A DNA stretch of 63,725 nucleotides, the filler included, from Octopus bimaculoides (lineage: Eukaryota): assembly GCF_001194135.2 (NCBI RefSeq). It is 3 parts of 3 records of this genome, joined end to end, with 100 filler letters (N's around TTAATTAATTAA, not from the genome) between each part and the next. Parts side by side here need not be neighbours in the genome. Positions count along the whole stretch, not along the records: positions 29,861 to 61,741 come from NC_069010.1; 2 more parts are not named here. One strand, written 5' to 3'. The position numbers and the translations under genes are program-made. Positions 14,089-50,639 of the stretch are shown here, piece by piece; the stretch's first letter is position 1; each line of letters opens with the position of its first letter. Under the pieces are notes generated by a model. It did not search any database, was not told where the DNA came from, and saw nothing but the letters and a program-made list of their open reading frames with translations.

Positions 14089-14428
14089 GGCGCAGGAGTG
14101 GCTGTGTGGTAAATAACTTGCTTACCAACCACATGGTCCCGGGTTCAGTCCCACTGCCTGGCACTTTGGGCAAGTGTCTTCTACTATAGCCTCGGGTCGA
14201 CAAAAGCCTTGTGAGTGGATTTGATAGACGGAAACTGAAAGAAGCCCGTTGTCAAGCCCACCATTCGCTTGACAACGTTGCCGTAATCTAGCTGTTCGTC
14301 AAAAGAGACCGATAGAGCAAATACTAGGCTTACAAAGAATGAGTCCTGGGGTCGATTTGTTCGACTTAAGGGCCGTGCTCCAGAATGGCCGCAGTCAAAT
14401 GACCGAAACAAATAAAAGAGGAAAAGAG
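14089..14428 (+). mobile_element. SINE family 1, internally deleted
   Basis: ggcgcaggagtggctgtgtggtaa head through to the gtcaaatgaccgaaacaa tail. Confidence 0.85.
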
Positions 14429-29860: not shown

Positions 29861-30864
29861 AGCTAAGTGAGACCAAAATCTAAGGCCTCTGCCAGGGATG
29901 TAGCCAGCCCACTTACGCGTAACTTCCTTCTTTGGACACTAAACTCTGCTTGCGAAGACCTTTTGAGGCAAGTGAAATCCAAATCAAACTAAATTTGTAG
30001 ACTGGTACCCATGCCAATGTCTCTTCATTGAACACTAAACTCGGCTTGCGAGGTGTTCTTAGTGCTCCACTGGTACAGGTGCCATCACGATTTCGCTTTT
30101 GCTTGCCCCAACAGGTCTTCGCAAGCCAAATCCAATAATGTTCGGATGTTATTGTTTTGGTTTCATTCAATATAAAATAAAGTTATGTGAAATATTTTTG
30201 ATATTCATCAGATTTATTTTACAAAATATTGCAGTGACACTTTTTAATTACTTGATCTTAATTAGCATTGGTGACAGATGCATTATAGTAGTGGTGACGG
30301 AATGGAATGTAAGTAGGGTTACACATTCCTTTTAATATTTTTCTTATATCAACAATGACATCAGAAAAACAGTTTCTGTCAGTGAAACCCTTCTGCAAGT
30401 ATCTTTTATATCTTCAAATGTGTTGGCAACTGGGTTTCCACCCAATTAAGGTCCACCACATTGATAGAGAGGGCATCAATAGGGTAGAACTAAATATTGC
30501 TCATCTGGAAAGAAAGCTGCTTTATTAATAAGGGCTACTGAGGTTGAAATATACCCAAATATTTGCTGAATCAGATGACATTCTGGTGAAATGTGGTGTC
30601 AGCAATTAGAATTCAAGATTACCAGCAGTAACGTTTAGCAAAGAGGGCAGGTGTATGTTGACCCTATTTCAAATGGTGTGTCATGTATTTGTGGCTATAT
30701 CATTAATGGCCAACTAGTAACACCTTAAAAAAGTGTTGACTACAAGCATAGTGTTCCCTATTTGACTATTGACGATAACATGTCCCACAATAATGAAACA
30801 TAGATTAATAATAACAATAATGAAATTATATTATAATATATAAAATTTGGAATATTAATTTCAG

Positions 30865-30912
30865 AGAGTGTAAAGATTCTGGAGGACGACCTTGAGGCAC
30901 CACAGCAAATTA
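30865..30912 (+). CDS. Candidate 48-nt phase-1/1 exon of the death-domain gene (SVKILEDDLEAPQQI)
   Basis: tttcag acceptor, gtgagt donor, open frame; flanking introns homologous to those of the 72-nt exons. Confidence 0.4.
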
Positions 30913-31737
30913 GTGAGTATAAAATAAACAGTGACCAATTGATTTCTATAAATTGTACTTGAACTTGGGTTTTTTTAGTTTATCAGAATGACTGGGAACA
31001 GTTTTCATTCCTAACTTACATTTGAAAGATTAGCTGTATAATAATTCTATTGAATATATCGATATTACTGAAATTTCACAAAATATCCAAAGAGGTTAGA
31101 ATTGTTCGTAAAATGGACAATTTAGAAGACAATGGGGTTAATAATATATTTTGGAACAGAAAACAAAATTATGTTGTTGTTTAAGAGTAAACAGTTGATT
31201 TAATTTTAATTTGTTTTACATCATTACTAAGCTTATTGATAAGTTGTTGTTACGTATAAGTGTCATAGCCTGGCAAAGTTACCTTGCCATGTGTTCCAGG
31301 GGTGAACACTCTGTCTTTTTCACTGATAGTAAGTCGATCAGTAAATCCACTAAACCTTTTCTTTATCGAAATAGAAGAGTTTGGTTTGCAGCGACGACAT
31401 GTCATAGATGTATTATAGATGTAAGAAAGAAAAGAGAGAACTAAGAGAAAATCAGTTTTATTAAGTCTTAATCAAAAGCGTTAATTCCATTTGTGTTAGA
31501 TTGTGCAAGATGACTTAAGAGAGAAAGAGAAATGGGGACTTAAGAAGATTGGTCTTTTGTTGGTGGAGCTAAATATTGAGCTATTATATGGTATCACTGT
31601 AGAAAGTATAAAGATATTTACCAAAACCACTAGTTGAGTGCTTGTGATAGGAATGTCTCACAAAAGTAAAATATACACTATTAAGAAAGATTTTAAAAAA
31701 TTCTATAAATTGTAAAACTTTGATATATGTATTTCAG

Positions 31738-31809
31738 AGAGGTTAAGGCTGGAGGAGAAACACCTCCATAGTATAGAAAAGAAATTGTCAGTTAAGCAGC
31801 AACATGTTG
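31738..31809 (+). CDS. Candidate 72-nt phase-1/1 exon, paralogue of the DD N-terminal exon (RLRLEEKHLHSIEKKLSVKQQHV)
   Basis: tttcag/gtgagt; same length and phase as 37912-37983; similar peptide but lacks the conserved Trp. Confidence 0.5.
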
Positions 31810-32374
31810 GTGAGTATAAAATAACTGTACCAAATTGATTTTTATATGATTTACTTCATCTGAGCATATTTTGTTTGCCGGAAAGACTGAAAATAGGTTC
31901 TATTCCTAAAATTACCAATTGAAAGATTAGCTATAGAATAATTCTATTAAAGATATTACTAAAACTGAATAAAATGTCTACCAAGGGTGGACCACACAAT
32001 ACAGCTAATGTTGGCTTCTGGAAAAGAGAACTAAAATATATAATTGCTCAAGGGTCAAAGAAAATGCGTAATGAAAACAGTTTTGTTTGTTTTACATTTT
32101 TACTAAGTTTAATTATAGGATGTCATCATTGTTGTTGTTTAGGTAGATGTGTCTCATAAACTGGCGCACTTACAATGGAATGTTGCAAGTGCGAAAAGTG
32201 TCTTTTTTCGTTGATAGTAAATCTAACATTACGTCCACTAAACATTGTCTTTATCCAAGCTGAAGACTTTGGTTTGCTGCTCACACAAAACTTTGTTTTT
32301 TTCTCTCTCTCTCTCTCTCCCTCTCTCTCCCTCTCTCTCTTCCTGATAGATAATGGCTGCAAAAAGCAATATAA

Positions 32375-32545
32375 GAAATGATATCACCCTCATCATTTAT
32401 CCTTTAATTTCCGTGCTCCCATGGATTGGATGGGTGGTCCCTGTCCAAGTCAGTTCTTATTATTGCCCTCCTGGATTGGTTGAGGAACACATCTCACACA
32501 TTCCAGTTTTTCTCTGATGGTATGCCCTTCTTAACACCAACTACT
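32375..32545 (-). mobile_element. RTE-type LINE 3' tail fragment
   Basis: Reverse complement ttggtgttaagaagggcat...ccatccaatccatg... matches 34530-34690. Confidence 0.5.
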
Positions 32546-32689
32546 TTATAATGGATCCTGGGTGCATTGAATTGTGACACAAGCACTAGCAAAATTATCT
32601 TTCGCAACAAAATTAAACATACCCCTCTGAATTATGCAAAGATAGATCGAACATATTGCAATATAGGAGAGTAAATGGTTAGAGTATCG

Positions 32690-33945
32690 CTCCTTAAGAA
32701 CGTTTATGGCGTTACTTGGAAGCTGTTTTTCATATGCCAAGAAGGGAAGGTTAAAATGGACTGAAGATGAACTAGATGTGCATATACAGGTGCCCTACAT
32801 TGACTCAAAGCAAAATCAACCATTCCCACTCCTGGACAATTTGAAATGTCATCGAAACCATGATTCAAATCAGTCTCATGATGTCAGCAATAAACAAGTT
32901 TAAAGCTGAGTGAAGAAGGCAAAAGCAAAGATTGCTCCAGGATGTGATGGTGTACCATATAGAGTGTACATGCGTTGTACTCAATCATATTAGAAGTATT
33001 AGCTACTACCCTGAGAGTTGTGGCTGAAAGATGAACTGGTTGATGCAAGTCAGGTGTTTACTTACATTAAGCTGAAGCAGACTAAATTGGCCAGTTCAGA
33101 CCAGTTTCAATCTTGAATATAGATGGTAAGATTTGCATGCATATACTTGCTAAGATATCTACAAAATAATGGCTACGGGACTGAGAGAATTCAGACGACT
33201 GCGTGTGAGCATTTTCAATCTGGAACGTGATACAAGACAGAAAGAAGAATAAAAGGGACTTGAATTCTTTATAGATTGATCTTGCTAAAGCTTACAGGTT
33301 TGTATCACACAAATTTTTAATGGACACAGTGGAATTCTTTTATATCTTAGACGAGATTAAAGATCTGATGAGGAGCTGCTATAACAGTTTCAAAATATGC
33401 TTCAAGAAAGAAAATGAAACAAAAACAGACCAGTATCATCTTGGAATCGGAATTTCTGTAGTTTGTATTATATCAATCATTTGGTTTTTGCTTACGATGG
33501 AGGTTTTACTTAGATGAGCAGATTGATCAGAAGGAATGGCTCAAGGGAAATCACCGAAGAAGTCATTCGTGGATGATACCACAATACTAACAAGTGACCC
33601 AAAGGATATGCAAATAGTTCTGCATAGACTGGATTAATTAATTACTTGGTAAAGAATGAAAGTTAAAGCAAATACTTCATGCAGTCTGTCGTTTGTCGAA
33701 TGTAAGCAGAAGTAAGTAAATTTAAATATAGCAAGAGAAGCCATATCAAAGGTAAAAGACAAATCTATAAAAGGATTAGGATGATGATGTACTAGCTTGC
33801 TGTCTGGTAGGGGAGTGGAGGCATTGATACATAGCTTGGCACAAGCAAAAGAATTATAAGCATTAAATACGCCAAAGTGACTGGGCAAATACGGTCTTTG
33901 TCGCTTCCATTTTGATCTCTATCTCCGACTTGCTTATATATTCTT
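32690..33945 (+). pseudogene. Decayed reverse transcriptase of an RLE-type (HERO/NeSL-like) non-LTR retrotransposon
   Basis: Remnant motifs APGCDGVPYRVY, FRPVSILNIDGK, IDLAKAY-FVSH, FFYILDEIK, SFVDDTTIL, RMKVKA; many stops. Confidence 0.75.
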
Positions 33946-34690: not shown

Positions 34691-36529
34691 ATGAATATTA
34701 TTGAAATTTCATAAAATAATTACCGATGTTAACATGGTTGGGAATATGGATAAATTACTATTTCAGATATTTTCACTGCATTAATGTGTGAATGACTAAT
34801 GATATGTAGTTAATGAGGGTTTGTATAAATGTACAATATTTTCGGACACTTGTTATCATTTTCTGTTCCATTTCATGTGTCCAAAGAGGTGTGAATGACA
34901 TTAAAATGTCTTCAAAACTTTGCTGAATCAGATGATACTCTGGTGATGTGGACAGTTAAAATTAAAAAGTAACAACTGTACGCTTTAAGAATGAGAGAAT
35001 GCGTATGTTTATCTTACCTGAATTATTGTGTCATGTGTTTGTGGTTGATCACTGATGATCAAATTGGTTGATGTTAGAATTAAGGAAAAGATGAAAAGAA
35101 ATTTGGTCAATAATTTCAAGAAGTAGGAGGACAATATTATGTCACACGTGTAATACAGATGCAGTGTGTTCAGCCTAAATTTGACAACTGTTTATGTCTT
35201 CTATATTCAGAGACACCGGGATGTATTGTTGAACGACAATCAATGACAATGGACTTTATAAAGATGAAAGATGTAATTGAGAAAATGTTAGCTGACATGG
35301 ACGACTGCAATCGAACTAGGGATTAGAAAAGAATTACCTGGATTATGATGTACAAATACCACATATCAAAATGACAACACCATGGCTGCTGTTCAACAAT
35401 TTGTAAACATTTTAAAAGCTGTAAACCATAACATGGGCAGCTGCAAAGGGGACTACAAAGCCCTGGCCAGTAGGTCTTCAGTTGCGTCCCCAGTGAAGGA
35501 GGCATGATGTCACCCCACATCTTTGAACACAGCTTTGAACACAGCTTTGGGTTCAATTGAGATGACCATGCAATGATCCATGAGACGGTGGTCAAGCACT
35601 TTCTGAACACAGTTGGTTCTGTCTGAAAGGACTTAAAAGTAGCATCAGGATTTAGATCCTTTCCATACCCCCAGAAAGAGTCAAAAGTATTTGTCGGAGA
35701 ATTTTTATAACTTCAGTTGACTCAATTTCTAGCTTTCTAATTTCCCTGATTGTAATCCTATGGATTATTAAGTATGGGCCACCCGGGGAGAAAGACACCA
35801 TCCGCTGTAACGGCAACACGAAAATTGGGCCTGTGGGCGAGACTAAGGAGGTGTTCAAAGATTTTCCAGGCACCATAGAGAGGAATGCTTGTGTCAGGTT
35901 GCAGAGGCACCTTAAAAGCGTGGTGGAAGCTGAGGGAAATTCCTTTGGGTAATTTATATTCTCCTAGCCACATCTCGTTGAAATTTGTTCACTTAAATAC
36001 TTTTTTTTTTAATGTGACATTGTACATTCTTTTATTCAAACTGACAAATTTAAACTGAACATTTTAAATAAGAAACGAAAGTCTAAATGAACAAAAGAAC
36101 AGCAAACAGTGTTATCAAGTGATAATTAAATGAGAAATTGCAACATTGTTAGATTATGGAGGATGTCTTAATATATATAGAGAGAGTAGGTTTAGGAAAG
36201 TTTAGGGGTAAGCGTCTAAGTTAATGGCAATATTCTTGTTTGATTTACATTTTGACTGACATTTTGAATATTGATAATTTATTATAGTTAGTGTTAAACC
36301 AGATGTCTTTTGTAATCTAGCAGTCTTATGATTTACTGCTAGTAAATCTATCATTAGATCCACTACATATTGTATATATCTACCAACAAGACTTTGATTT
36401 ACAACTGAGATAACAGCTGTCTCTCTCTTTTCCTTCTCTCTCTCTCCCTATTTCTGTATCTCTATCTTTCTCTTTCACCCTGTTTCTCTTTCTCTCTCTT
36501 TAAAATAGATTCCTGCTGCAAGTTTCATG

Positions 36530-36990
36530 TCCTCATAATAGAGAAACTATTTTTAGGAAGGTTACTCAAGTTTTGTTGTGGACTTAAATTTGGCGGAGTT
36601 AATGGGATCATTGTATAATCTTTACCTGTTAGAGTTGTAGCAAAAAAGTGGATCAGTTGATGATTGGTTCAAGGCAGAAGGAGATTACTTACCAATGGAT
36701 GCTAATACAGAACCGATCGAGCAATTCAGAACAATTTCAGTCTTGAATATAGATGGCAATATTTGCTTAGGTGTACTTGCTGAGGGACCAATTCGATATC
36801 TACAAAATAATGGCTATAGGACTTAAGACAAAAAGAAGAAAAAATGGATTTCTATGTTGCATGACTTGATGTGGCTAATACTTCACATTCTGTATCACAC
36901 AAATAAATGAGAGCACAATAGATTTATTTTATATATGAGATAAGATAAAGGATGTGATGAGGATATCTGTTTAACATGTTCCAATGGATT
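36530..36990 (+). pseudogene. Second HERO/NeSL-like RT fragment
   Basis: EQFRTISVLNIDGN...YLQNNGY; homologous to 33090-33390. Confidence 0.65.
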
Positions 36991-37299
36991 GGATGAATGG
37001 TCAATATCAAAGTCACATCTTATTCAGAATTACTGACCACCTTCCTTGGTTGAAGAACACACGCAACTCACTTAAACATTCCAGATTTTCTATGGCGGTA
37101 TGGCCCTTCTAAATCCAGAAACCTTATAAATAGTCCTGAGTGAATTTTATTGTGGTATAAACATTAGAAAGATTGCCGACTCCTCAACATCTCTCTCACT
37201 TATGCAAAGTAACATCAGACATGCTGGAACAGGGAATGAGTTTAAGTGGTTTAGAGAACAGCACCTTCAGAACACTTATGCAGTTAATAGGAAAGTATT

Positions 37300-37600
37300 T
37301 GCAGGTGCTAAGTGCAGCAGTCTACAATGTACTGAAAATGAACTGGACAGGTATATACAGGGGCCCTAGAGTGACCCACAGCATGGTCAGCAGTTCCAGC
37401 TCATGGACGATTTGAAACATTGAATGAAAATAGGAATCACATTCCAGCTTGGTTATTTCATCAAGAAACAAGAAGATAGCTGTGTGAAGAAGGTAAAAGC
37501 CAAAGGGGCCCCAGAGGTCGACAGTGTGCCAAAGAAAGTGTACAAGTATTTGTACAGGATTCTGTTATAAGCTTTACGTACTACTTAGAGAATTGTGACA
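37300..37600 (+). pseudogene. Third HERO/NeSL-like fragment (pre-RT region)
   Basis: LKCTENELDRYIQ...KVKAKGAPEVDSVPKKVYK; homologous to 32750-32980. Confidence 0.55.
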
Positions 37601-37911
37601 TGAAAGTGAACTAGTTCATCGAGTGATGATTAGATGAGATATTTGCTATGCTATTTGATAATGTACAAAGTTTTTATTAGAAAGGGGAGGTTTAGGAAGG
37701 TTAATACATTCCGTTGTGGACCTAAATATTGAGCAATTGCATGGGACACTGAAAGAAAGTATAAAAATATTGACCAAAACCATAGTGGTCACCAATCGAC
37801 CATTGATAATAGGAATGACTTACAGTATAAAATACAGTAATAAAATAAAGACCAATTAACAGACAGAGAAATAATACAATGAAGTGTAAAATTTGGAAAT
37901 ATTTATTTCAG

Positions 37912-37983
37912 AGTATCTAAAACTGAATAAGGAGCTTCTTCATGGTACAGCAAAGAAGTTAGGGAGCAACTGGCAGCAAGCTG
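37912..37983 (+). CDS. Death-domain gene, penultimate exon (YLKLNKELLHGTAKKLGSNWQQA)
   Basis: tttcag acceptor, gtgagt donor, phase 1; splices in frame to 39774; L-x2-ia-x-LG-x2-W-x2 pattern of DD helices 1-2. Confidence 0.8.
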
Positions 37984-39052
37984 GTGAGTATAAAATACGT
38001 AACTGATTTCTATAAATTTTGTCATTACTCAAACTTGATTGTTTGAATATCTGAGAATAAGTTCCATTCCTAATTTCGTAATTAAAGGTTAGCCAAAGAT
38101 ATTAATGATGTTAGCATAGTTTTGCATGGTTAATGAAAGAGATAACTTAGACAATACAATAGAGTTTATATTGTCATTTGGAACAGGTAACTAAATGATA
38201 TTGTTTAAAGCTGAGTTATGTTTATGTTTGTTTACGTTGTTTACATTTCTACTAGGTTGTTGCTGTTGTAGTTGTTGTTGTTGATATTTTGGGTAAATGG
38301 TTTCCTTAATCTGGCAGACTTAAGAGGAAAATAGTTCCAGATGTGACATCATTGTTTTACTTGGGAGAACAGGATCACTTTATCAAATGCAACTTTTTTA
38401 ATAGGAAAGTGTGCATTTTGTGTGACATGTTGTAATCTGCCCTTTGGCCAGTCTGTTTCTCTATATTTATTGTAGTTCTTTAACGCCAGGTCAACCTATT
38501 GTCTTATCTCTAAACAGACAAGCCCTATTGTTGATTGTGTTCATGGGTAGATTGAACTCAGCACATGTAAGTTAATGAAACACTAATTAATAATTAATTA
38601 TGCCAACAGATGCAAACTCGAATTTATTTTGTTTCTCAATTGAAATCATTTCACTCTTCTTTACATTACAAATGTCCTTTGGAAAGGCATGAACATCACA
38701 ATAACCCATTTCGTCTTGTCTGAATGTGTAACAAAATAACATCTCATTTCTACAATGTTCCCAGCAATGCCTCCCCATGCTACATATCTAGGTAGACTGC
38801 ACCATAGAGAAATGTCTTTACCAGGGACATAGAGCAGTGATGGAGACTAGATCTGAACCTCTGATCCTTGACTCAAGAGGTCATGACAATATCCTGTCTG
38901 TCTGCTAACAGAAATGTATTATCTAAACTAAGAGAGGATATCATCTATGACATATCAAACTTGTTATATTCCTGGAATTAATATAAAATTACCAGTCACA
39001 TACTAGGGTAAAATCAATCCACTAACAGCAGTCCATTATCATCATCATCACC

Positions 39053-39084
<32 letters not shown>

Positions 39085-39773
39085 CATCGTCATCACATCA
39101 TCATCATCATCACCATCATCTTGTGTCTATTTTTTCAAGTTTTAATGTGTTAGACTACTTCTCCCACAGCTGTTGTCTTTTGCTCTCTAAATTGTGGCCT
39201 TGATCCAGTGAAAGAAATCCTTGAGTTATGAACCAAGACAATTAATTTGGTGTCTTCTATAATATTTGAGAAATAAGAAGTATTATATTTTTTTGTATAA
39301 TTGTGATCATTCTGGTATCTTGTCTATTTGTAATTCAATTGGTCCCCGTGTACCTAATATTACTGGTAATATTTGTCAGTCCAGTCCGCACTTTCCAGAT
39401 ATTTCTAAATGCTGATATTCCAGAGGATGAAGAGGCATCACACATCATTATTACCAGCATTGATCCTGTGATGTTATCAGATGGTTTTTCAGTGCCTTCC
39501 TGAAAAACAAAATAAATACTGCTCCTGCTATCTGTTTACCATACATTTTCTCAAATCCTTCATTTTTATCTTCATTTTTCATTTCAACATCTTTGTTATT
39601 TTTGTCGACACCCTTTGAATTAGAGAGCAACATCTTATATTTCTCATGTTTCTTAGCTATTTTTTTATATTTCTCTATTGATATAGTTTCTATGTTATAT
39701 CTATAACCAACAGTACAGTTTTGTATATTATTGTTAATGTTGTTGTTATCTCTTATCGTTGTATCTTTTGCAG

Positions 39774-39979
39774 CTATCTATTTAGGAGTTACAACAGTTG
39801 AGCAGGATATCATCAAGAATGATTTTCCTCATGACACAGTAAAACAGAGTTACCAAATGCTTTGTGAGTGGTTTCTAAGTTGTGTGCCAGAGGAACGTAC
39901 GGTTGAGACACTCAGGAAAGCTTTGCAAGATGCTGAGTGCTTTGCTGCACTTGAATATCTTTCATTACAAGAAGAGTAA
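39774..39979 (+). CDS. Death-domain gene, terminal exon (AIYLGVTTVEQDIIKNDFPHDTVKQSYQMLCEWF...TLRKALQDAECFAALEYLSLQEE*)
   Basis: ttttgcag acceptor at 39773; DD signature LG..i..I....p......MLxxW......tv..L..aL; ends in TAA. Confidence 0.8.
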
Positions 39980-40321
39980 ATTTCTGTGTAAATGTTGTTT
40001 AGTCCCAGGTGAATGCTGACCAAAGGGAGACCTACGATCAAAGTATAAAGAACTCAGAAACACATTGTATAACGTGTGAAATGCAGTGGATTTGGTTACT
40101 AGTTCTAGACGATTTAGCTACCATATAGAGAGTCCTTCACTGGTTTGGATTCTTTGTTAGAATAAATATAAACTTTGAAATGTCCATTTGTTGTTGTTGC
40201 TGCTGCAGTTGTATATATAATCACCTTCCTAAACAATTCCAATGTTATTTAGACAGTTTTAATATCCTCTGGTCAATTCATAGTTTTCTGACTTCATTTA
40301 TAACTTAGAATAAAATGTCTA

Positions 40322-40364
<43 letters not shown>

Positions 40365-40365
<1 letters not shown>

Positions 40366-40757
40366 TTCTCTTTCTCTTTTCTCTTTTAATTGTTTCAGTC
40401 ATTTGACTGCAGCCATGCTGGAGTACAACCTTTAGTCGAGCATATCGACCCCAGGACTTATTCTTTGGAAGCCCAGTACTTATTCTATCGGTGTCTTTTG
40501 CCGAACCATTACGTCATGGGGACGTAAACACACCACCATCGGTTGTCAAGTGATGCTGGGGGACAAACACAGACACACATATATATACATACATACGACG
40601 GGCTTCTTTCAGTTTCCATCTACCAAATCCACTCGCAAGGTTTTGGTTGGACCGAGGCTATAGTAGAAGACACTTACCCAAGGTGCCACGCAATGGGAAT
40701 GAACCCAGAACCACGTGGTTGGTAAGCAAGCTACTTACCACACAGCCACTCCTGCGA
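40365..40757 (-). mobile_element. SINE family 1, full length
   Basis: Complete tail-to-head match between (TA)n runs. Confidence 0.85.
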
Positions 40758-41717
40758 CTATATATATANNNNNNNNNNNNNNNNNNNNNNNNNNNNNNNN
40801 NNNNNNNNNNNNNNNNNNNNNNNNNNNNNNNNNNNNNNNNNNNNNNNNNNNNNNNNNNNNNNNNNNNNNNNNNNNNNNNNNNNNNNNNNNNNNNNNNNNN
40901 NNNNNNNNNNNNNNNNNNNNNNNNNNNNNNNNNNNNNNNNNNNNNNNNNNNNNNNNNNNNNNNNNNNNNNNNNNNNNNNNNNNNNNNNNNNNNNNNNNNN
41001 NNNNNNNNNNNNNNNNNNNNNNNNNNNNNNNNNNNNNNNNNNNNNNNNNNNNNNNNNNNNNNNNNNNNNNNNNNNNNNNNNNNNNNNNNNNNNNNNNNNN
41101 NNNNNNNNNNNNNNNNNNNNNNNNNNNNNNNNNNNNNNNNNNNNNNNNNNNNNNNNNNNNNNNNNNNNNNNNNNNNNNNNNNNNNNNNNNNNNNNNNNNN
41201 NNNNNNNNNNNNNNNNNNNNNNNNNNNNNNNNNNNNNNNNNNNNNNNNNNNNNNNNNNNNNNNNNNNNNNNNNNNNNNNNNNNNNNNNNNNNNNNNNNNN
41301 NNNNNNNNNNNNNNNNNNNNNNNNNNNNNNNNNNNNNNNNNNNNNNNNNNNNNNNNNNNNNNNNNNNNNNNNNNNNNNNNNNNNNNNNNNNNNNNNNNNN
41401 NNNNNNNNNNNNNNNNNNNNNNNNNNNNNNNNNNNNNNNNNNNNNNNNNNNNNNNNNNNNNNNNNNNNNNNNNNNNNNNNNNNNNNNNNNNNNNNNNNNN
41501 NNNNNNNNNNNNNNNNNNNNNNNNNNNNNNNNNNNNNNNNNNNNNNNNNNNNNNNNNNNNNNNNNNNNNNNNNNNNNNNNNNNNNNNNNNNNNNNNNNNN
41601 NNNNNNNNNNNNNNNNNNNNNNNNNNNNNNNNNNNNNNNNNNNNNNNNNNNNNNNNNNNNNNNNNNNNNNNNNNNNNNNNNNNNNNNNNNNNNNNNNNNN
41701 NNNNNNNNNNNNNNNNC

Positions 41718-41992
41718 TTGGCTTGCCGGGTCTTCTCACGCACAGCCCATTTCCAAAGGTCTCGGTCCGTAGTCATCGCCTCGGTGAGGCCCAATGTACG
41801 AAGGTCTTGCCTCACCACCTCAGCCCAGGTCTTCCTGGGCCTACCTCTTCCACGGGTTCCCTCAACTGTTAGGGTGTGGCACTTTTTCACGCAGCTATCC
41901 TCCTCCATTCTCACCACATGTCCATACCAGCGCAATCGTCTCTCTTGCACGCCACAACTGATGCTTCTAATGTTCAGCTTTTCTCTCAAGAT
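41718..41992 (-). mobile_element. RTE-clade LINE ORF2 C-terminus
   Basis: RRLRWYGHVVRMEEDSCVKKC...GRGRPRKTWAEVVRQDLRTLGL. Confidence 0.85.
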
Positions 41993-43676
41993 ACTTACAT
42001 ATATATATATATATATATATATCGATGTATTTTTATCTTTCTTTGTCATATAGAAATGGTATTTCTATGTTATATACAATGTATCTAACGATACATCACC
42101 TTGTCCCATTATGGTTTAGGGACGGTCAGATGTGGGGATGGTTTTATAATAATTCGTGGGGTCTTGAGTGCAATTAAGAATTATTTTTATTTTACATTCT
42201 CGCTTTAGGATCCTCGTTATTTACTAGTTATAAAGTTTTAATAAAATAAAACTTGACGTTGTACATCCAAACCGGAAACCTTTAATAATAACTATGCTGA
42301 AAAATCCACCAAATCAAAATACTGATACATTTGTTTTAATCTCATGGGATTGTTGAAAAGCCACAGTGATTCTCACTTTCGAAATAATTTCAGGGAATAA
42401 GCAAAGTATTGTTTTTCCACACAATATTTAACTTCACACTTCTCGAACTTTATTGCATTTAAATTTGCTATTTAATTTCACAATCGTTACATCATAGACT
42501 CAGATAAAATTGTAAATAATTAAAGCACATGAATCTTCCTAGAAGGACTTCCTTTGACCATAAAATTATAGGATTTGGCAGAAAGCTCTACATTGCAAAA
42601 TTTAATGAAACAAGATAGGAAGACTCGTAAGCATTATCCATTTGTTAATTGATTCTTTTGTGATAGGCGTTAACAAATTAAATACAAAAATATTTAAATT
42701 GCCTCAAATTTATTTCGGAAACTGATACAAAATTACAATTGAAAATTATTTGTATTAGAACAACTTATTTGGTATCAAATTTTGTATATAATTATTTCAA
42801 AATAAATTGCTTACTGACATATATCTTCAAAAACTGGGAGTGAAATTATACTCAAACATTACTCCCATTACTTAACTTGAGAGAGGAGAAATTACAGCTT
42901 GCTTATACAAAGGTAAATTTACCTTCTCTCGATAAAAAATAGTATTAGGGACCCTTCTTGCATCATCCCTACTCATGGCACCTTAGTTCTTCATAGAAAC
43001 AGTAAAATTCGATTCTAATTGATGGCAAATATTACCTTCCAATTAAAGTTAGTCTATAAGCATTTACACCTAAGCCTATCACAAGTAATCGAGCATTATT
43101 ATCCTTCGAGTTTAAAATTTCACCTCTCACACATAACTAAATTATATAATATATTATTTTACTGCCCCTCAATATTACCTTCTCACCCCTTTTAATCATA
43201 TACCACCAGTTTTATTAACTCTTAACTTAAATTTAGACTATAGAGTGCACAAATATCCATTACCCTAACCCTAACCCCTCCCTAAATTGAACATTTGGCC
43301 AACTACAATGACTTACTTTGACTTTATTTGCAACTAACTTTACCTTCCTATACTATCGGTTGGTTTGTTTCACTTAATTTAGTCTGAATCTAATTTCAGT
43401 CAGCATGGAACTACTTCCATCTATTGTACACCCCCTATTAGATTCACTTATTTCAATACCCTCACCCCCATTTAACATATAATTATTTAACATATTAATA
43501 TGAACTTCACACCTATTTTAGTTTGTATTTGCTTGTACTTTGTATTGCAGTTAGTGCTTTTCTGTCAGCCATTATTGATAGGTGTGTTATTATATGCATG
43601 GAAGCCCATTTGTTGAAGCTCCAATATGTATGCACCCAAGCATGGATTGATAATAATAATAATAATAATAATAATA

Positions 43677-43735
<59 letters not shown>

Positions 43736-44076
43736 CAATAATAATAATAATATAATATGAAGTATGACTAAGCAAATTGTGGTATGAACCTGCATTTGCA
43801 ATGTTAATAACAATTAGCAAGTAATTCAATTGTAATCATTCAATTAATTTAGAGATTTATTCTTATACTAATTTTTATGATCATTAGACTTGACTTAGAG
43901 AATGTTTAGTCAATTAACCGTTTGAATTTCTAATCACCTAACTGTTTGGGTGATGTGGACGTTTGTTCAGAAATCAGACTCTGTATTATATACTCAAAAT
44001 TTAGTTCATGTCCCTAGTTTTTATCTCCCCTTAACCGTTATTTTTGTTTTTCCTTATCATTCTTCCTAATTCATTT

Positions 44077-44420
44077 CCAAGACGCCTCCAAACAAGTCTG
44101 GCGCATGACCAATAGAGTTCGTGGGGCTGGCCATCCAAGTCTGGCGACTTGTCTCCTGTACAGCCTGCCATCGTATCCTGTACGTTCGCGGTTTTGATGG
44201 GTCTTTCACAACGCTCTGCCTCTCTTGCCGAGAGTCGGAGTAGGCCTTTTTATTCTGTTATATCCTTATAAACGATGCCTGTTAAGCTGTTTTGCCGAAC
44301 AACTTGTCCGTTGGATATTTTCTCATGCTCCCTGTGCTCTTGTCAGGTGCAGCTTGCCTCTGTTGGACCCATGGTTGTTGGTTAAGTAATTAATAGAAAA
44401 GGTTGTCTGTCTTTTGTCTG
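44077..44420 (-). mobile_element. Tx1/L1-type RT fragment (inverted duplicate of ~60430-60770)
   Basis: GDKSPDLDGQPHELY remnant; near-identical to the reverse complement of 60430-60770. Confidence 0.65.
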
Positions 44421-44975
44421 CGTGCAATTCTGTTGTCCTTGCTAATTTTAGCAAGTGTGCATGGAAATAGCACCAGGAACATGTTTAATTCGTTTCCTCG
44501 AACTCCTCTTAGCTCACGTTATATCATATTTACCAGCATATATACTCTCTGCCATTTCGGATGTTGTTTCCATTTGGCTTTTTTCTTGCACTTGTATGAA
44601 CATTTAGTTGTGGTTGTTGTACACACGTGTTTTTTTGGGGGGGACATTTGTTTTATACTCGTTTGTTTTACTTTCAACTTTCAGGCTGTTGAGGGGGTAA
44701 TGTTGTAAAGGAAATTTGTTTTTTTTTTTGTTGAACCTTTCAATGTTCTTTAGTTCAAAGGTTAATCTCAAATAAGGGAGCCAAACTATGAAAGGAGTCT
44801 CTAGAGAGATCTGCAAGATTTAATTGCTAAATCCTCTTCAATTCACAACTTGTCACCTTAAAGAACGTATTGGACAAAGTGGTTGTGGGAAAAGACAGGA
44901 TGATTCTGGCTGAAGGAATTGAATCCTGGGTCACTGTTTCGTAAAGTTAGGCCTGGGACTAAAGAGCAGCAACAT

Positions 44976-45430
44976 TTACACACATCTCCCTTCTTTGTCT
45001 AATGATAGATATTCAAATGCAGTGAAGCACTTGTCTTCTTTAAGAGCTTCTTTTAGTGATCTGTGTGTCCGTTTTTCTAGATTATAACTTCTAAACCATT
45101 TGTACAGCATTTGGTCGATCTCTTATTCTAGAATGTTCAAAGGATAGTTATGCTTGATCCAGGTCAGTAGTTTTAATTCCCAAGAAAATACCAATTTGTT
45201 ACCAATTACTTCCTAACTGCCGTGACACCTTCAGGAGATCCTTCTCTTCCAGGTTTTCGGAATCAACTTCCTGGAATGTAGCCTCTAATGGCTGTGAATC
45301 AGTCTGTAAGTTCTTCTCCTCAACCTTTGCACATTCAACTGTCTGTGATGTGGTCAGGACGTTCTGCAGACAAATTGCAGTCTCTGTCACCATTTGGACT
45401 TCCTTTTCTTCAATCTTTGCAGTCTCAACT
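44976..45430 (-). pseudogene. Intronless death-domain pseudogene, paralogue of the 37912-39979 gene
   Basis: LEEKDLLKVSRQLGSNW*QIGIFLGIKTTDLD/IKHNYPLNILE*EIDQMLYKWFRSYNLEKRTHRSLKEALKEDKCFTAFEYLSLDKE; two stops and one frameshift; no intron at the GSNWQQ|AIYLG site. Confidence 0.8.
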
Positions 45431-45615
45431 TGCTATGATTTACTTTTTGAACATGACCCCAGGGATGGAATTTCATGTATTAACTTCACACAACCTACAT
45501 GGTATTTGTAGTGAGAATAATGTCTTTAATTTTTGTTTAGACGTTTCATTTTTAAGAAGGTTCAATGAAGTTAGGTCTCTTTTGTTTTTCCAGTAAAAAT
45601 TGGCTNNNNNNNNNN

Positions 45616-46560
45616 TTCGGCCTGAATCTCCCTCCACTTGGGATTGCATGTGAAAGTGATGAATAAGTCAGGCCTGCCGTAATGGCGGACAAAGGTCATT
45701 GCATCCTGTGTTCTTTCATGCATATATCAGGGACTTCCAATGAATGTGGAAGGCAAGATGCAAAGTCTTCCTATGCTTGTTGGAGCAGCATCCTTGTTCA
45801 TGGCATCTCGGAGATGGATGTAGTTGTCAGAGCACAATTTTTGTTGATGTGATCTGATGAAACACAATCTCTCTGATTCCACTTTTGCGCACATATCGAC
45901 TGCAAATTGATGAAACAGTTCTCCAGACTGGTGGAGGTGATTACAGGAGTTGTTTCGTATCATAAATCAGTATGAGTAGAAGTCCATGCAGGATACTGGC
46001 TTGTTGAGATATTCATTGCGATTTTGTGGATGTTGCTGTGGTATACCGATGTGGTAGCCATCCTCACCGTAAACAAACAAAAGTGGATACTGAAGTGTAT
46101 CGTATGATCGGTGTGTTTCTGTAANNNNNNNNNNGTGTGTTTCTGTAATTCGTTGGAGGGTGGTGTCACGTCGCCTAAGGACAATGTCTCTGGGATTGTG
46201 CTGTTCACCGTGAAGGAGTACGGCTATTTCATTGCGTGTGGGTGCATTGTAACGGCCTGCATGTTCTGTAGATGGTCTTTTCTGAGCATCTATGATAACA
46301 TTGAAATTCGAAGAAGCTTCTGTTTCTAAGGCATACTTGAAGCTGTGTACGTAGCTGTTTGTTTGGTGTAGAAGTTCTTGTAGTTGCATTATCAATTGAA
46401 ATTTAGTGCCATTGGAAATGGAGTTTCGTCGGGTGGCTTGTTCATGTAAATTACCTACAAAGTACAGTTGAAGGAATTGAGGATCTTTATTTTCAGCAGG
46501 TTCGAGCGATCCTATCCTATGGTAAACCTGTCCCTGCACTTTGAAAGTTGGCATAAACCC
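45616..46560 (-). pseudogene. Helitron Rep fragment (copy A)
   Basis: FMPTFKVQGQVYHRIGSL, HRSYDTLQYPLL, ILPSTFIGSP*YMHERTQDAMTFVRHYGRPDLFITFTCNP. Confidence 0.9.
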
Positions 46561-46825
46561 GTTCTCAAAGGCATGGTAGAGTACTTCTTTGCTCCTTCCT
46601 CCGTCTTGAAATAAACCTTCACTGTTCCATACTTCCTTCTTCTCATAAATAATACAACTTCCTCTGTAATTTCTTTCAAACAATTCTCAATCACTTCTGT
46701 CTCTGCAATTTCGATTTTCTTGGAGCCAGTATTCAACGTTTTATTTGTAATAATTTTTCTCTCGGCTTCCTCCTTATTTCTTTGGGTGGGTTAACCCGCA
46801 GACCGTCTCATTCTTTCTTCAAATA
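46561..46825 (-). mobile_element. Fragment of LINE-type Gag/ORF1, related to 50745-51740
   Basis: TLNTGSKKIEIAETEVIENC...RRKYGTVKVYFKTEEGAKKYST aligns with TMKADTRKIEIAPIEAIEEC...GRRYATVEVRLTTEEAIKHST. Confidence 0.75.
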
Positions 46826-47227
46826 CTATAGTGGTGTGGGTCGTTTTAAGTCTCCGTACTCTAGGAAGGTTAGAGGTGAAGTGGATGATTCTATTGTATC
46901 TTCGTGATAAGTAATGAGAATGAGATGTAAAGGGACAATGTTTTTGAGATTCCGGTTCGAATGACATCAATGTTTTTGTTTCACTTTTGACACGTAATAC
47001 TTAAATAGTGGAGGGGATATGATGTTGCTGTGGGCTCGAACTATGCAAGAGGTTAAAAAATGTTTTTGACTAAAACACAACCGGGACCCTAAGTAAGGCA
47101 TGTGTAAAATTTGAATGAAATTGGTTGTGTAGTTCTTGAGTTTTAGGGATTTACATAGACACATAGACACACACACACACACACAGACAGACAGACAGAC
47201 AGATTCTCATTTTTATATATATATAGA
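46826..47227 (-). mobile_element. Helitron 5' terminus (copy A)
   Basis: Minus strand starts A|TCTATATATATATAAAAATGAGAATCTGTCTG with (GTCT)n; 46826-47065 matches 55348-55610. Confidence 0.8.
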
Positions 47228-49090: not shown

Positions 49091-50639
49091 ATCAAATTTT
49101 GAAGTGACCCTTTTTAGATTTATAAAGTCGCTAAAAGTGTTACGTTTTATCAATTTATAGAAAACTAACACTTTTATAAATGAGTTCATTGCTACAGATT
49201 AAATGTTAAACTAAATTTGCTCCAGCTGGTCTATATAAACAGTAACCTACAGCTTCGAACAGCTTTATTATTTTGTTGTGTATTTACATCGCATATGATG
49301 TGTGAATATAATTTCACCCCCAGTTATTCAAGCAAAAAATCAGAAACATATATTTTCAATTTATTTAGAATAATTTTGTACAAAGTATGATACAAAATAA
49401 TTTTGTTGTGTCTGGGGAGAGTCATTCTCCTTTAGTGCCTTATAATTTAACACACTCACCAGTAAAATTTTGTTTTGTTTTAATAGTAAATATCAATATC
49501 TGAATAATTTTTTTATTTAAATTTAATATCTTGATTATTTAATTTGAAAACAATCAGATTTGTTCACTTCTATCACAAAAGAATCCAATAAAAGATGAAT
49601 AATACTTATGAGTCGTCCTTTCCCATTCCACAAAACTCTGCTCGGTAGAGTTTCCTGTCACATCTTATAATGTACATAAAAGTTTCATGTGTTTTACTTA
49701 TTCAATCTTGGTCTCTGCTTTAAGAACTTGAAATCTAATTTCAAATTAAAATAACTTGTAATAACAGTAGAGTAGTATGAAGGTAAATGTTGTAGGGCAA
49801 AACTGTACTCTTCCTTTATCTGAAGTTATTTAAAAAGAAGGAGACATTGTGGCGTTTCCACAATCACATGGAATTGAAATAACAAGTGTTGTGTCATTAT
49901 TTTATTATCTCAGGATTTTGTAGCACAGCTATTATTGAATTTTATTTTTTTAATGTATTTTCATGTGTATAATCGTGAAGATTTATTTTTACTGACAAAA
50001 ATTGCAGCAATTAGTAAATAATGAAGATCCTAAAGTAAGAATATAAAATAAAAAATATTGTATATTGCACTCAAAACCCCTTGAATTTTTATTCAACCAC
50101 CCCCACTTTGGAGAGGCCTGTCTTAAACCACAAAAGGACAAAGTGAGATATCCTTAGATACATCATATTTTATGTAGAAATACTCTATAGGATATATAAA
50201 TGGAAAAAGACATCAATATATATATACCAGGCATTCTACTCTCAGCTAAAAATGAAGGTAGATAACTATTAATATAGCAGAAGATATTAAAGCTGTCTAT
50301 ATAACACTGGGGGAGTTTAGGGAGGGGGTTAGATATACAACAACAGCAACAACAACAATAAATGAACATTTTTCAAAGTTTCTCTTTATTTTAAAAGTGA
50401 ATTTTGAACAAAGGAGTCAAACCAGTGAAGGGGTCACCATGTGGTTGAGATACATGCTAGAATTAGTNNNNNNNNNNNNNNNNNNNNNNNNNNNNNNNNN
50501 NNNNNNNNNNNNNNNNNNNNNNNNNNNNNNNNNNNNNNNNNNNNNNNNNNNNNNNNNNNNNNNNNNNTCTTTGCTGTGTGTTGCTTGTGTTATATACTCA
50601 GTCGACAACAGACATGCATGAAGTGCTGTCTGGCCAGTG

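What the first reader, a model, noticed from the sequence alone, without database searches (positions are those of the whole stretch)
44976..45605. Processed death-domain paralogue carried inside a Helitron segment, 5 kb from its spliced relative
The minus strand encodes a full DD aligning end to end with the spliced gene (QMLYKWF/QMLCEWF, RT..SLKEAL/RT.ETLRKAL, CFTAFEYLSL/CFAALEYLSL). It has no intron where the relative has a 1.8-kb one, and its upstream ETAKIEEKEVQ repeats resemble the 48-nt exon peptide, which implies an mRNA intermediate. It lies between the Helitron Rep fragment and the 707-bp block shared with copy B. The equivalent position in B is the 904-nt gap (59160-60063), close in size to the 822 bp in A, so a second copy probably hides there. 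Together this suggests a retrocopy-then-Helitron route for spreading immune or apoptosis adaptor domains. A 10-N break at 45606-45615 leaves the Rep-DD adjacency unproven.
Basis: partly seen in the sequence, partly recalled or inferred. Interest (0 to 1): 0.7.

Follow-up and report, generated by a model that had tools for sequence, protein, structure and literature searches.

The report
Dead octopus retrocopy beside Helitron fragment
This is a decayed, intron-less, poly(A)-tailed copy of the 3' third of an octopus ankyrin-RING-death-domain ("MIB2-like") gene that sits beside a broken Helitron transposase fragment and was duplicated with it once nearby; it is an ordinary processed pseudogene, and nothing shows that the Helitron moved it.

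Summary
The minus strand from 45605 to 44719 is collinear with the last ~200 codons, 3'UTR and poly(A) site of an octopus gene family. The family has ankyrin repeats, a RING finger, 48-51-nt linker exons and a C-terminal death domain, and is annotated "E3 ubiquitin-protein ligase MIB2-like".

Three annotated O. bimaculoides genes have five introns across this stretch. The window's spliced relative has the one that can be checked. The candidate has none. Its similarity to the family stops about 19 nt after a degenerate AATAAA signal, at an A11 run. So "processed" is well supported.

The copy is dead. It has at least five premature stops, two frame changes and a ~100-nt deletion in the RING part. 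It is only ~40-50% identical in protein to any known member, so the neighbour is not its parent.

Copy B shows the same 3'UTR end and A-run at the edge of its 905-N gap, so a second copy very probably lies there.

The Helitron part is unproven. Only the transposase N-terminal third is present, and both copies share a stop codon in it. The shared end has no CTRR terminus, no hairpin and no A|T insertion site. The two copies lie 8-16 kb apart and inverted. Local duplication fits at least as well as Helitron transposition. Helitron spread of retrogenes is already known from bats. Interest is low to moderate.

The parts
44719..45605 (-). Processed pseudogene (retrocopy) of an ANK-RING-linker-death-domain "MIB2-like" gene. 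It is 5'-truncated or runs into the 10-N gap.
   Evidence: It is collinear with family proteins from 'ANFY...' to the stop codon. There are no introns at five conserved junctions. The 3'UTR similarity ends at the A-run.
45479..45604 (-). Equivalent of the end of the 'GANFY...LKTLF' exon and the start of the RING exon (ANFYWKNKRDLTSLNLLKNETSKQKLKTLFSLQIPCRLCEVN). It is contiguous across a junction that holds a 0.7-3 kb intron in family genes.
   Evidence: tblastn shows 40-55% identity to 13 family proteins, for example P0067 at 52% and P0072 at 55%. The intron positions come from P0025/L004, P0035/L003 and P0041/L005.
45433..45478 (-). Remnant of the RING-finger exon. About 100 nt are deleted, with a frame change and in-frame TGA and TAG stops (..EVNT*.. 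/ ..LGSCSKSKS*QVE..).
   Evidence: P0066 and P0065 alignments.
45264..45425 (-). Four linker-exon equivalents of 48, 42, 51 and 21 nt (ETAKIEEKEVQMVTET / ..ICLQNVLTTSQTV / ECAKVEEKNLQTDSQPL / EATFQEV). Each ends in ..GTT G or a similar sequence, as phase-1 family exons do.
   Evidence: The family's linker exons of 48 and 51 nt are seen in L004 (16397-16447, 18481-18528) and L005.
45192..45263 (-). Equivalent of the 72-nt first death-domain exon (DSENLEEKDLLKVSRQLGSNW*QIG). It has an in-frame TAA where the family has W or Q.
   Evidence: It matches the L003 exon 14295-14369 at 64% identity.
44976..45191 (-). Equivalent of the last exon, the rest of the death domain and the stop codon. It has two in-frame TAA stops and one frame change near 45150.
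44730..44975 (-). Retrocopy 3'UTR. It includes a degenerate polyadenylation signal, ACTAAA where the family has AATAAA, at about 44748-44753.
   Evidence: Alignment A5. It is 79% identical to the family consensus in the 120 columns before the A-run.
44719..44729 (-). A11 run, the remnant of the poly(A) tail, about 19 nt after the signal.
   Evidence: After it, identity to the family falls to 45% while the other six members stay at 71-81%.
44077..44718 (-). 642 nt of non-coding flank after the poly(A), shared with copy B. It has no Helitron Rep or helicase coding potential and is not a high-copy repeat in the loci on hand.
   Evidence: No hits in L001-L005.
45606..45615 (.). 10-N assembly join between the Rep fragment and the retrocopy. 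The adjacency is unproven.
   Evidence: In copy B the Rep frame continues 101 nt past this point.
45616..46560 (-). Helitron transposase fragment of copy A, equal to Helraiser residues ~200-545. It has a shared in-frame TGA (..FIGSP*YMHERT..), a further indel, and an unmerged 14-nt overlap at the 10-N join 46125-46134.
46560..46760 (-). Fragment of a gag-like gene joined upstream of the Rep fragment in copy A only.
   Evidence: tblastn to the 331-aa ORF at 50745-51740 gives 40% identity over 67 aa, E 1.3e-7.
46826..47056 (-). Block 3, shared with copy B (55350-55609). Substitution identity is 94.4%, with a 29-nt indel.
60065..60131 (+). Copy B: the last ~50 nt of the same retrocopy 3'UTR plus the A-run (CAACACAAAAAAAAAAC), directly at the edge of the 905-N gap.
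   Evidence: It matches copy A at 58 of 59 positions.
59160..60064 (.). 905-N gap in copy B that should hold the rest of the retrocopy.
   Evidence: About 826 nt of the part visible in A, plus about 80 nt, would fill it. This is my inference.
60132..60770 (+). Copy B of the post-poly(A) flank. The shared sequence ends at ...GGAGGCGTCTTGG.
57580..59159 (+). Copy B Helitron transposase. The N-terminal arginine-rich and zinc-finger-like part is 57580-58125. A 153-N gap follows, then 58279-59159, equal to Helraiser residues 257-566 and beyond. It runs into the 905-N gap.
55350..55609 (+). Copy B of block 3. It abuts the 527-N gap, so the outer limit of the shared unit on this side is unknown.
37912..37983 (+). 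Spliced relative: the 72-nt first death-domain exon (EYLKLNKELLHGTAKKLGSNWQQA.).
39774..39979 (+). Spliced relative: the last exon (..AIYLGVTTVEQ...LSLQEE*). It is followed by a 3'UTR with the conserved AATAAA signal.

Best explanation
An mRNA of one member of the octopus ankyrin-RING-linker-death-domain ("MIB2-like") gene family was reverse-transcribed and inserted as a 5'-truncated, poly(A)-tailed copy of ~0.9-1.0 kb. I infer that a LINE's target-primed reverse transcription did this, acting in trans. The copy came to lie directly 3' of, and on the same strand as, a truncated and already inactivated Helitron transposase fragment. It then decayed into a pseudogene, with stops, frame changes and a deletion in the RING part. 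Later, a 3-5 kb stretch was duplicated once, giving the inverted copies A (44077-47056) and B (55350-60770). This stretch comprised block 3, the Rep fragment, the retrocopy and 642 nt of flank. The copies then diverged by ~2-3% and by internal rearrangements. I think a local segmental (inverted) duplication is somewhat more likely than trans-mobilisation as a non-autonomous Helitron, but the data do not decide. The element has no predicted present function.

Shown: the family membership, the absent introns, the poly(A) end, the pseudogene state, the shared tail in B and the shared stop in Rep.

Inferred: LINE mediation, the order of events and the mode of duplication.
For: Family:
- A profile search found 59 relatives, mostly C-terminal death domains behind RING and ankyrin parts.
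- The sources name them E3 ubiquitin-protein ligase MIB2(-like) of O. bimaculoides, O. sinensis and O. vulgaris, with Pfam Ank, zf-C3HC4_3 and Death.
- The candidate aligns over 146 of its 151 conceptual residues to P0029 (E 1.5e-25) and at 49% identity to P0035. A further 42 residues upstream align at 45604-45479.

Introns:
- P0025/L004, P0035/L003 and P0041/L005 have separate exons for 'ANFY', RING, each 48-51-nt linker, the 72-nt first death-domain exon and the last exon. The introns are 0.4-5.7 kb.
- The window's relative has the same 72-nt exon and a 1790-nt intron.
- The candidate is contiguous across all of these junctions.

Poly(A):
- In alignment A5 all six genomic family members share GAAATAAAGATAAAC...GAAATGTTC and stay 71-81% alike for the next 120 columns.
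- The candidate is 79% like them up to that point, then has A11, then drops to 45%.

Duplication:
- A and B are 98.4% and 97-100% identical over the two main blocks.
- B shows the 3'UTR end and the A-run.
- Both Rep fragments carry the same TGA in ..FIGSP*YMHERT...

No Helitron end:
- The shared unit ends in ...GGCGTCTTGG, followed by A in copy A and C in copy B.
- The fold z-score is 0.62.
- There is no GC-rich hairpin followed by CTRR inside the flank.
- There is no Rep or helicase frame after the poly(A).
Against: - The 5' end of the retrocopy and its junction with Rep lie in a 10-N join, so no target-site duplication can be checked and the adjacency is unproven.
- No parent gene was found. 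The best relative is ~46-52% identical over parts, so the age and source of the copy are unknown.
- The A-run is only 11 nt, and the signal hexamer is degenerate in the copy.
- Landing within 5 kb of a family gene is unlikely for a random insertion. It is largely explained by how the finding was ascertained, but not fully.
- A and B share blocks on both sides of the Rep and retrocopy core despite different interiors. This is what copies of one mobile composite element would look like, so a Helitron or other transposition origin of the pair remains possible.
Confidence: 0.8

Rival explanations
1. The retrocopy inserted into, or was captured by, a Helitron. The composite was then spread by rolling-circle transposition, with the transposase supplied in trans. 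A and B are two transposed copies.
For: - A genuine Helitron transposase fragment lies next to the retrocopy in both copies and on the same strand.
- A and B share sequence on both sides (block 3 and the 642-nt flank) around different interiors, as members of one element family often do.
- Copy B has ~500-bp tandem repeats upstream of Rep. From my own knowledge, some mollusc Helitron-like elements carry such repeats.
- The process itself is documented in vespertilionid bats (PMC4224331).
Against: - There is no CTRR end, no subterminal hairpin and no A|T target at the one definable boundary.
- The catalytic Rep and helicase parts are missing, and the sequence after the poly(A) is not Helitron-coding. 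This is not a simple nested insertion in an intact element.
- Only two copies are seen, 8-16 kb apart and inverted.
- The 5' end cannot be examined because of the gap at 54820-55346.
- The Rep-retrocopy junction is hidden in both copies.
Confidence: 0.25
2. It is not a retrocopy. It is a DNA-level duplicate of a family member whose 3' exons are fused, through ancestral intron loss or a single-exon subfamily.
For: No parent gene is known, so an intron-less parent cannot be excluded directly. The copy lies inside a cluster of family genes, where tandem and inverted DNA duplications are frequent.
Against: - Every family gene that could be inspected keeps the introns: three O. bimaculoides genes, the window's relative and two O. 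vulgaris loci.
- Similarity to the family stops exactly at the expected cleavage site and is replaced by an A-run, whereas DNA-level paralogues stay alike for over 120 nt beyond it.
- Even an intron-less parent would itself have arisen by retroposition.
Confidence: 0.05
3. The adjacency of Rep and retrocopy, and perhaps the A/B pair itself, is an assembly artefact: a scaffolding mis-join at the 10-N gap, or collapsed or duplicated repeat contigs.
For: - The junction is a 10-N join, and in B it is a 905-N gap.
- The other 10-N join (46125-46134) is an unmerged 14-nt overlap, which shows imperfect contig merging.
- A 294-nt stretch is 100% identical between A and B amid 97-98% flanks. That pattern could reflect collapsed repeats.
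Against: - The same order and orientation (Rep, gap, retrocopy tail, flank) is seen independently in both copies, with consistent spacing.
- A and B differ by 2-3% and by large internal differences, so they are not the same reads placed twice.
Confidence: 0.1

Closest known systems
Processed pseudogenes / retrocopies made by LINE machinery acting on cellular mRNA
   Same: It lacks all introns of the parent family over the copied part. It is 5'-truncated. It ends about 20 nt after the polyadenylation signal in an A-run. It has no promoter of its own and has decayed by stops and frameshifts.
   Different: No target-site duplication could be checked because the 5' end is in a gap. The parent gene is unidentified. 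The LINE responsible is unknown.
Helitron-amplified nested or captured retrogenes of vespertilionid bats (Thomas et al. 2014, PMC4224331)
   Same: A retrocopy with an A-run lies next to Helitron sequence, and the composite exists in more than one copy.
   Different: In bats the carrier elements have defined Helitron ends, many copies, and empty sites or target-site duplications. Here there are two local inverted copies, no recognisable Helitron ends and only a dead third of the transposase.
Octopus "E3 ubiquitin-protein ligase MIB2-like" ANK-RING-death-domain genes (e.g. O. bimaculoides P0025, P0035, P0041; O. sinensis P0065)
   Same: The candidate shows the same order of 'GANFY..LKTLF', RING, E/K-rich VQT linker repeats and C-terminal death domain. 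It also shares the conserved 3'UTR with the AATAAA signal.
   Different: The candidate has no introns, covers only the 3' third, is 36-52% identical and is not translatable. True MIB1/MIB2 of other animals have a different architecture and no death domain (my own knowledge), so the database name is only a label.
Helraiser / canonical Helitron transposase (PDB 7LCC)
   Same: The neighbouring fragment aligns to residues 257-566 at E 3e-42, including the ..DLFITFTCNPKW.. motif.
   Different: The HUH nuclease core and the helicase (residues ~570-1496) are absent from what is visible. An in-frame stop is shared by both copies.

Membership tests
Processed pseudogene (retrocopy) | Collinear with the spliced mRNA: parental introns are absent | tested here: met
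   Five junctions that hold introns in P0025, P0035 and P0041, and one in the window's relative, are contiguous in the candidate.
Processed pseudogene (retrocopy) | Ends at the mRNA cleavage site with a poly(A) tract | tested here: met
   An A11 run lies about 19 nt after the degenerate AATAAA equivalent. Similarity to the family is 79% before it and 45% after, while the family members stay at 71-81%.
Processed pseudogene (retrocopy) | Flanked by target-site duplications | not testable with these tools
   The 5' end lies at or inside the 10-N join 45606-45615, and in B inside the 905-N gap.
Processed pseudogene (retrocopy) | An identifiable parent gene elsewhere | tested here: not met
   No protein above ~52% identity was found. 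The neighbour is ~40% identical. Only the family, not the parent, is identified.
Death-domain superfamily | Sequence similarity to death domains across the whole domain | tested here: met
   The conceptual translation hits the PIDD, RIPK1 and CRADD death domains at E 0.002-0.009. The relative hits RIPK1, PIDD, CRADD and FAS. Family members carry Pfam PF00531.
Death-domain superfamily | Intact reading frame able to give a folded domain | tested here: not met
   There are three in-frame stops and one frame change within the domain.
Helitron (canonical, Helraiser-like) | Rep/helicase transposase homology | tested here: met
   Helraiser residues 257-566, E 3e-42. This is only the N-terminal third. 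The HUH core and helicase are not visible.
Helitron (canonical, Helraiser-like) | 3' end CTRR preceded by a GC-rich hairpin | tested here: not met
   The shared unit ends in ...GGAGGCGTCTTGG. The fold energy is no better than shuffles (z = 0.62). No hairpin followed by CTRR was found in 44040-44760.
Helitron (canonical, Helraiser-like) | Insertion between A and T, without target duplication | tested here: not met
   The base after the shared end is A in copy A and C in copy B. The 5' side is not testable because of the gap at 54820-55346.
Helitron (canonical, Helraiser-like) | 5' TC terminus | not testable with these tools
   Block 3 of B abuts a 527-N gap, so the outer boundary of the shared unit is undefined.
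Helitron-carried gene fragment | The fragment lies between the two ends of an element that occurs in several copies with empty sites | tested here: inconclusive
   There are two copies in the window with shared flanks. No ends were found, and the rest of this genome could not be searched with the tools on hand.

The most novel reading that the evidence does not exclude
The Rep-fragment, retrocopy and flank composite is a non-autonomous Helitron-derived element that was mobilised in trans. On this reading a cephalopod Helitron has amplified a retrocopy of an expanded ankyrin-RING-death-domain family. That would be the first case of Helitron-mediated retrogene spread outside bats. The inverted A/B pair could also be read through into a hairpin RNA that yields small RNAs against the family.
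Probability: 0.15. Interest if true: 0.45.

Novelty: new member of a known kind. Interest (0 to 1): 0.27.

Why it matters
It gives a clean, well-documented example that poly(A)-dependent retroposition of cellular mRNAs has operated in an octopus genome. It also adds a dead member to a large, lineage-expanded ankyrin-RING-death-domain family whose biology is unstudied.

The exon structure of that family is a useful by-product for annotation: symmetrical phase-1 linker exons of 48-51 nt, a 72-nt exon and a conserved intron inside the death domain.

If the composite proved to be mobilised by Helitrons, it would extend a mechanism so far described only in bats. As it stands, the locus is non-functional debris and does not bear on immune or apoptosis signalling.

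Tried and rejected
- Word-indexed protein search with the candidate's conceptual translation found no hit, so there is no close parent in the collection.
I used a profile of exact window pieces plus O. vulgaris hits instead.
- I looked in the window for a 48-nt linker exon of the relative with a splice-site and ORF scan, and with tblastn of the linker peptide. None was found in the piece. The 48-51-nt exons were shown in family genes elsewhere instead.
- I tested whether the sequence after the poly(A) continues the Helitron transposase. It has no such frame.
- I looked for a Helitron 3' hairpin and CTRR and found none.
- I tested whether block 3 is the 5' part of the gag-like element at 50745. 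There is no DNA similarity.
- Rfam, tRNA and tandem-repeat scans to classify the 642-nt flank found nothing.
- Exact-product look-ups aimed at ungapped contigs of the same genome all failed: the gag-like ORF, a 78-aa Rep ORF and a 101-aa flank ORF. Look-ups for P0029, P0065 and P0067 also returned nothing.
- The O. vulgaris loci of the relative's closest proteins show no retrocopy or Helitron nearby.
- The species could not be fixed. Genes are 65-75% and repeats 80-92% identical to both O. bimaculoides and O. vulgaris loci.
- I considered and rejected the neighbour as the parent, on identity. I also rejected a chance ORF, on E-values.

Full report
WHAT IS THERE

The piece is octopus DNA. The best protein matches of the spliced gene are Octopus vulgaris proteins at 67-76% identity. 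The wider family is annotated in O. bimaculoides, O. sinensis and O. vulgaris. The species itself could not be fixed.

On the minus strand, 45263-44976 translates into a death-domain-length sequence. It aligns end to end with two plus-strand exons at 37912-37983 and 39774-39979. Protein identity is 40-43% and nucleotide identity is 68.5% over 165 nt. The similarity is far beyond chance. It reaches E 1e-25 against family proteins. Even the decayed translation hits the PIDD, RIPK1 and CRADD death domains in the PDB at E ~2e-3. The relative hits RIPK1, PIDD, CRADD and FAS.

The relative has a 1790-nt phase-1 intron at 37984-39773, with donor GCTG|GTGAGT and acceptor TTTTGCAG|CT. The candidate reads straight through the same codon. 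One correction is needed: the domain is broken by three in-frame TAA stops and a frame change near 45150.

WHICH GENE FAMILY

A profile built from exact window pieces and the O. vulgaris hits found 59 relatives among 1.84 billion representative proteins. Nearly all share one architecture: ankyrin repeats, a C3HC4 RING finger, a run of E/K-rich "..PK.EEK.VQT..E.." repeats, and a C-terminal death domain. NCBI names them "E3 ubiquitin-protein ligase MIB2(-like)", with Pfam Ank, zf-C3HC4_3 and Death.

The candidate's upstream peptides, VETAKIEEKEVQMVTETA and VECAKVEEKNLQTDSQPLEA, are homologues of those linker repeats. For example, P0065 reads SKSEVETAKVETKEVRTVT.

In another frame, 45604-45479 reads ANFYWKNKRDLTSLNLLKNETSKQKLKTLFSLQIPCRLCEVN. 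This matches the family's "GANFY.KNK...PLDLIK..LKEKLKTF...C..CE" segment at 40-55% identity in 13 proteins. The copy therefore reaches the very edge of the 10-N join.

WHY IT IS A PROCESSED COPY

I mapped three annotated O. bimaculoides genes onto their loci: P0025/L004, P0035/L003 and P0041/L005. Each has separate exons for the 'ANFY' segment, the RING finger, each linker repeat (48 or 51 nt, phase 1), a 72-nt first death-domain exon and the last exon. The introns between them are 0.4-5.7 kb. In P0041 this stretch spans 16.9 kb of genome. In the candidate it is 629 nt. The candidate's internal units of 48, 42, 51, 21 and 72 nt abut one another exactly where family exons end.

The second hallmark is the 3' end. 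I aligned the downstream regions of the candidate and six family members: the relative, a second remnant in the window, two O. bimaculoides genes and two O. vulgaris loci. All six genomic members share ...GAAATAAAGATAAAC..GAAATGTTC and remain 71-81% alike for the next 120 columns. The candidate is 79% like them up to that point. It has ACTAAA in place of AATAAA, then about 19 nt, then A11 at 44729-44719. After that it drops to 45%, the level of a forced alignment. Loss of five conserved introns together with a poly(A) tract at the conserved cleavage site is the signature of retroposition.

Every relative I could inspect has the intron. No close parent is known, though: the best match is 46-52% identical over parts. 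The spliced neighbour is certainly not the parent.

STATE OF THE COPY

It is dead. There are stops at ..EVNT*....SKS*QVE....SNW*QIG....LDQA*.. and ..ILE*EID... There are two frame changes. About 100 nt of the RING exon are deleted.

THE HELITRON AND COPY B

The minus strand of 45616-46560 is a Helitron transposase fragment. The better-preserved copy B fragment at 58279-59159 aligns to Helraiser (PDB 7LCC) residues 257-566 of 1496 at E 3e-42.

Self-comparison shows three blocks shared with an inverted copy B:
- 44077-44783 = 60770-60065, 98.4% identical.
- 45616-46428 = 59058-58279. One 294-nt stretch is 100% identical and the rest is 97.2%.
- 46826-47056 = 55609-55350, 94.4% identical with a 29-nt indel.

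First, the start of the "707-bp block" is the retrocopy's own 3'UTR end and A-run. B shows TGGCTCCCTTATTTGAGATTAACCTTTGAACTAAAGAACATTGAAATGTTCAACACAAAAAAAAAAC right at the edge of its 905-N gap. The gap size fits: about 826 nt of the part visible in A plus about 80 nt.

Second, in B the Rep frame runs 101 nt past the point where A has its 10-N join (..KWREIQAELFFGQKPKDRHDLLAQVFHLRLITLMDLLKKGQ). So A's join hides at least ~100 nt, or A carries a deletion there. The adjacency is unproven in both copies. The other 10-N join, 46125-46134, is merely an unmerged 14-nt contig overlap.

Third, both Rep fragments share the same in-frame TGA (..FIGSP*YMHERT..). Neither copy has room for the missing ~930 residues of nuclease core and helicase. 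The transposase was therefore already dead and truncated when A and B separated.

Fourth, the Helitron hallmarks fail wherever they can be tested. The shared unit ends in ...GGAGGCGTCTTGG, followed by A in copy A and C in copy B. There is no CTRR. The terminal 70 nt fold no better than shuffles (z = 0.62). No GC-rich hairpin followed by CTRR exists in the flank. The 642 nt after the poly(A) have no Rep or helicase frame. The other end is lost in the 527-N gap.

A and B also differ inside. A has a gag-like fragment at 46760-46560, 40% identical to the ORF at 50745-51740 (E 1.3e-7), where B has the transposase N-terminus and three ~500-bp tandem repeats.

INTERPRETATION

The well-supported part is that this is a 5'-truncated processed pseudogene of the ANK-RING-death-domain family, duplicated once together with a neighbouring Helitron remnant.

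How the pair arose is open. A local inverted segmental duplication needs no extra assumptions. It also fits a region that holds other tandem and inverted duplications: 30556-33374 against 34913-37997, and 40098-42859 against 50467-49298. Mobilisation as a non-autonomous Helitron composite remains possible, because A and B share sequence on both sides of different interiors. It lacks any positive terminal evidence, however.

Helitron amplification of nested or captured retrogenes is already documented in vespertilionid bats (Thomas et al. 2014, PMC4224331).

The nearness of the retrocopy to a family gene looks improbable for a random insertion.

VERDICT

"Processed" is supported. "Second copy in B" is supported. 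"Full DD", "parent is the neighbour" and "spread by Helitron" are not supported or not shown. The object is a new member of a known kind, of low to moderate interest.

Noticed in passing
window 50745-51740 (+); fragment at 46560-46760 (-): There is an intact 331-aa gag-like ORF with a CCHC zinc knuckle (..CFTCGEKGHMKAWC..) and a lysine/glutamate-rich tail. It had no PHROGs hit and no exact product on record. A 40%-identical fragment of its residues 64-129 is joined directly upstream of the Helitron Rep fragment in copy A only.
   Followed up: partly
window 55647-57156 (+): Three tandem units of ~450-500 bp, 75-78% alike, lie between block 3 and the Helitron transposase N-terminus in copy B. 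They are absent from copy A and were missed by Tandem Repeats Finder.
   Followed up: no
window 40098-42859 (+) versus 50467-49298 (-); 54475-54648 (-): There is an older inverted duplication, 67-72% identical, of the 3' flank of the spliced relative. The minus-strand copy is the tail of a second, convergent family gene. Its last exon is lost in the 100-N gap 50468-50567 or displaced by the gag-like element. A weak 'ANFY'-exon remnant with a stop lies at 54475-54648.
   Followed up: partly
window 30556-33374 versus 34913-37997 (+); exon 31738-31809: There is a tandem duplication, 65-75% identical, of a ~2.8-kb unit. Each unit holds a 72-nt phase-1 exon. The upstream one (ERLRLEEKHLHSIEKKLSVKQQHVG) is a degenerate copy of the first death-domain exon, a type that serves as a linker exon in proteins such as P0012. 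This shows how the linker region grows by exon duplication.
   Followed up: partly
window 46125-46134: This 10-N join is flanked on both sides by the same 14 nt (TTACAGAAACACAC). It is an unmerged contig overlap, not missing sequence. Once collapsed, the Rep frame is continuous and matches copy B.
   Followed up: yes
window 46135-46428 versus 58279-58572: A 294-nt stretch is 100% identical between copies A and B, while the neighbouring shared sequence is 97-98% identical. This may be gene conversion, or repeat collapse in the assembly.
   Followed up: no
window 41717-42049 (-), next to the 948-N gap 40769-41716: There is a fragment encoding ..RLRWYGHVVRMEEDSCVKK..GRGRPRKTWAEVVRQDLRTLGL..DRDLWKWAV. 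From my own knowledge this looks like the C-terminal tail of a LINE-type element. It is inserted in the 3' flank of the relative and is 90.7% identical to L004 18715-18972 of O. bimaculoides.
   Followed up: no
window 40330-40768 and 61319-61552: These are short interspersed repeats with many copies, 80-92% identical, in every O. vulgaris and O. bimaculoides locus fetched. They were not classified. There were no tRNA or Rfam matches.
   Followed up: no
window 45616-45625 and 45596-45605 (minus strand): The two sides of the join show microhomology. The Rep contig ends ..ATTCAGGCCGAA. The retrocopy contig starts AGCCAATTTT, where family genes read ..CAGGGAGCCAAC... This could reflect a microhomology-mediated junction or deletion, or could have confused the assembler.
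   Followed up: no
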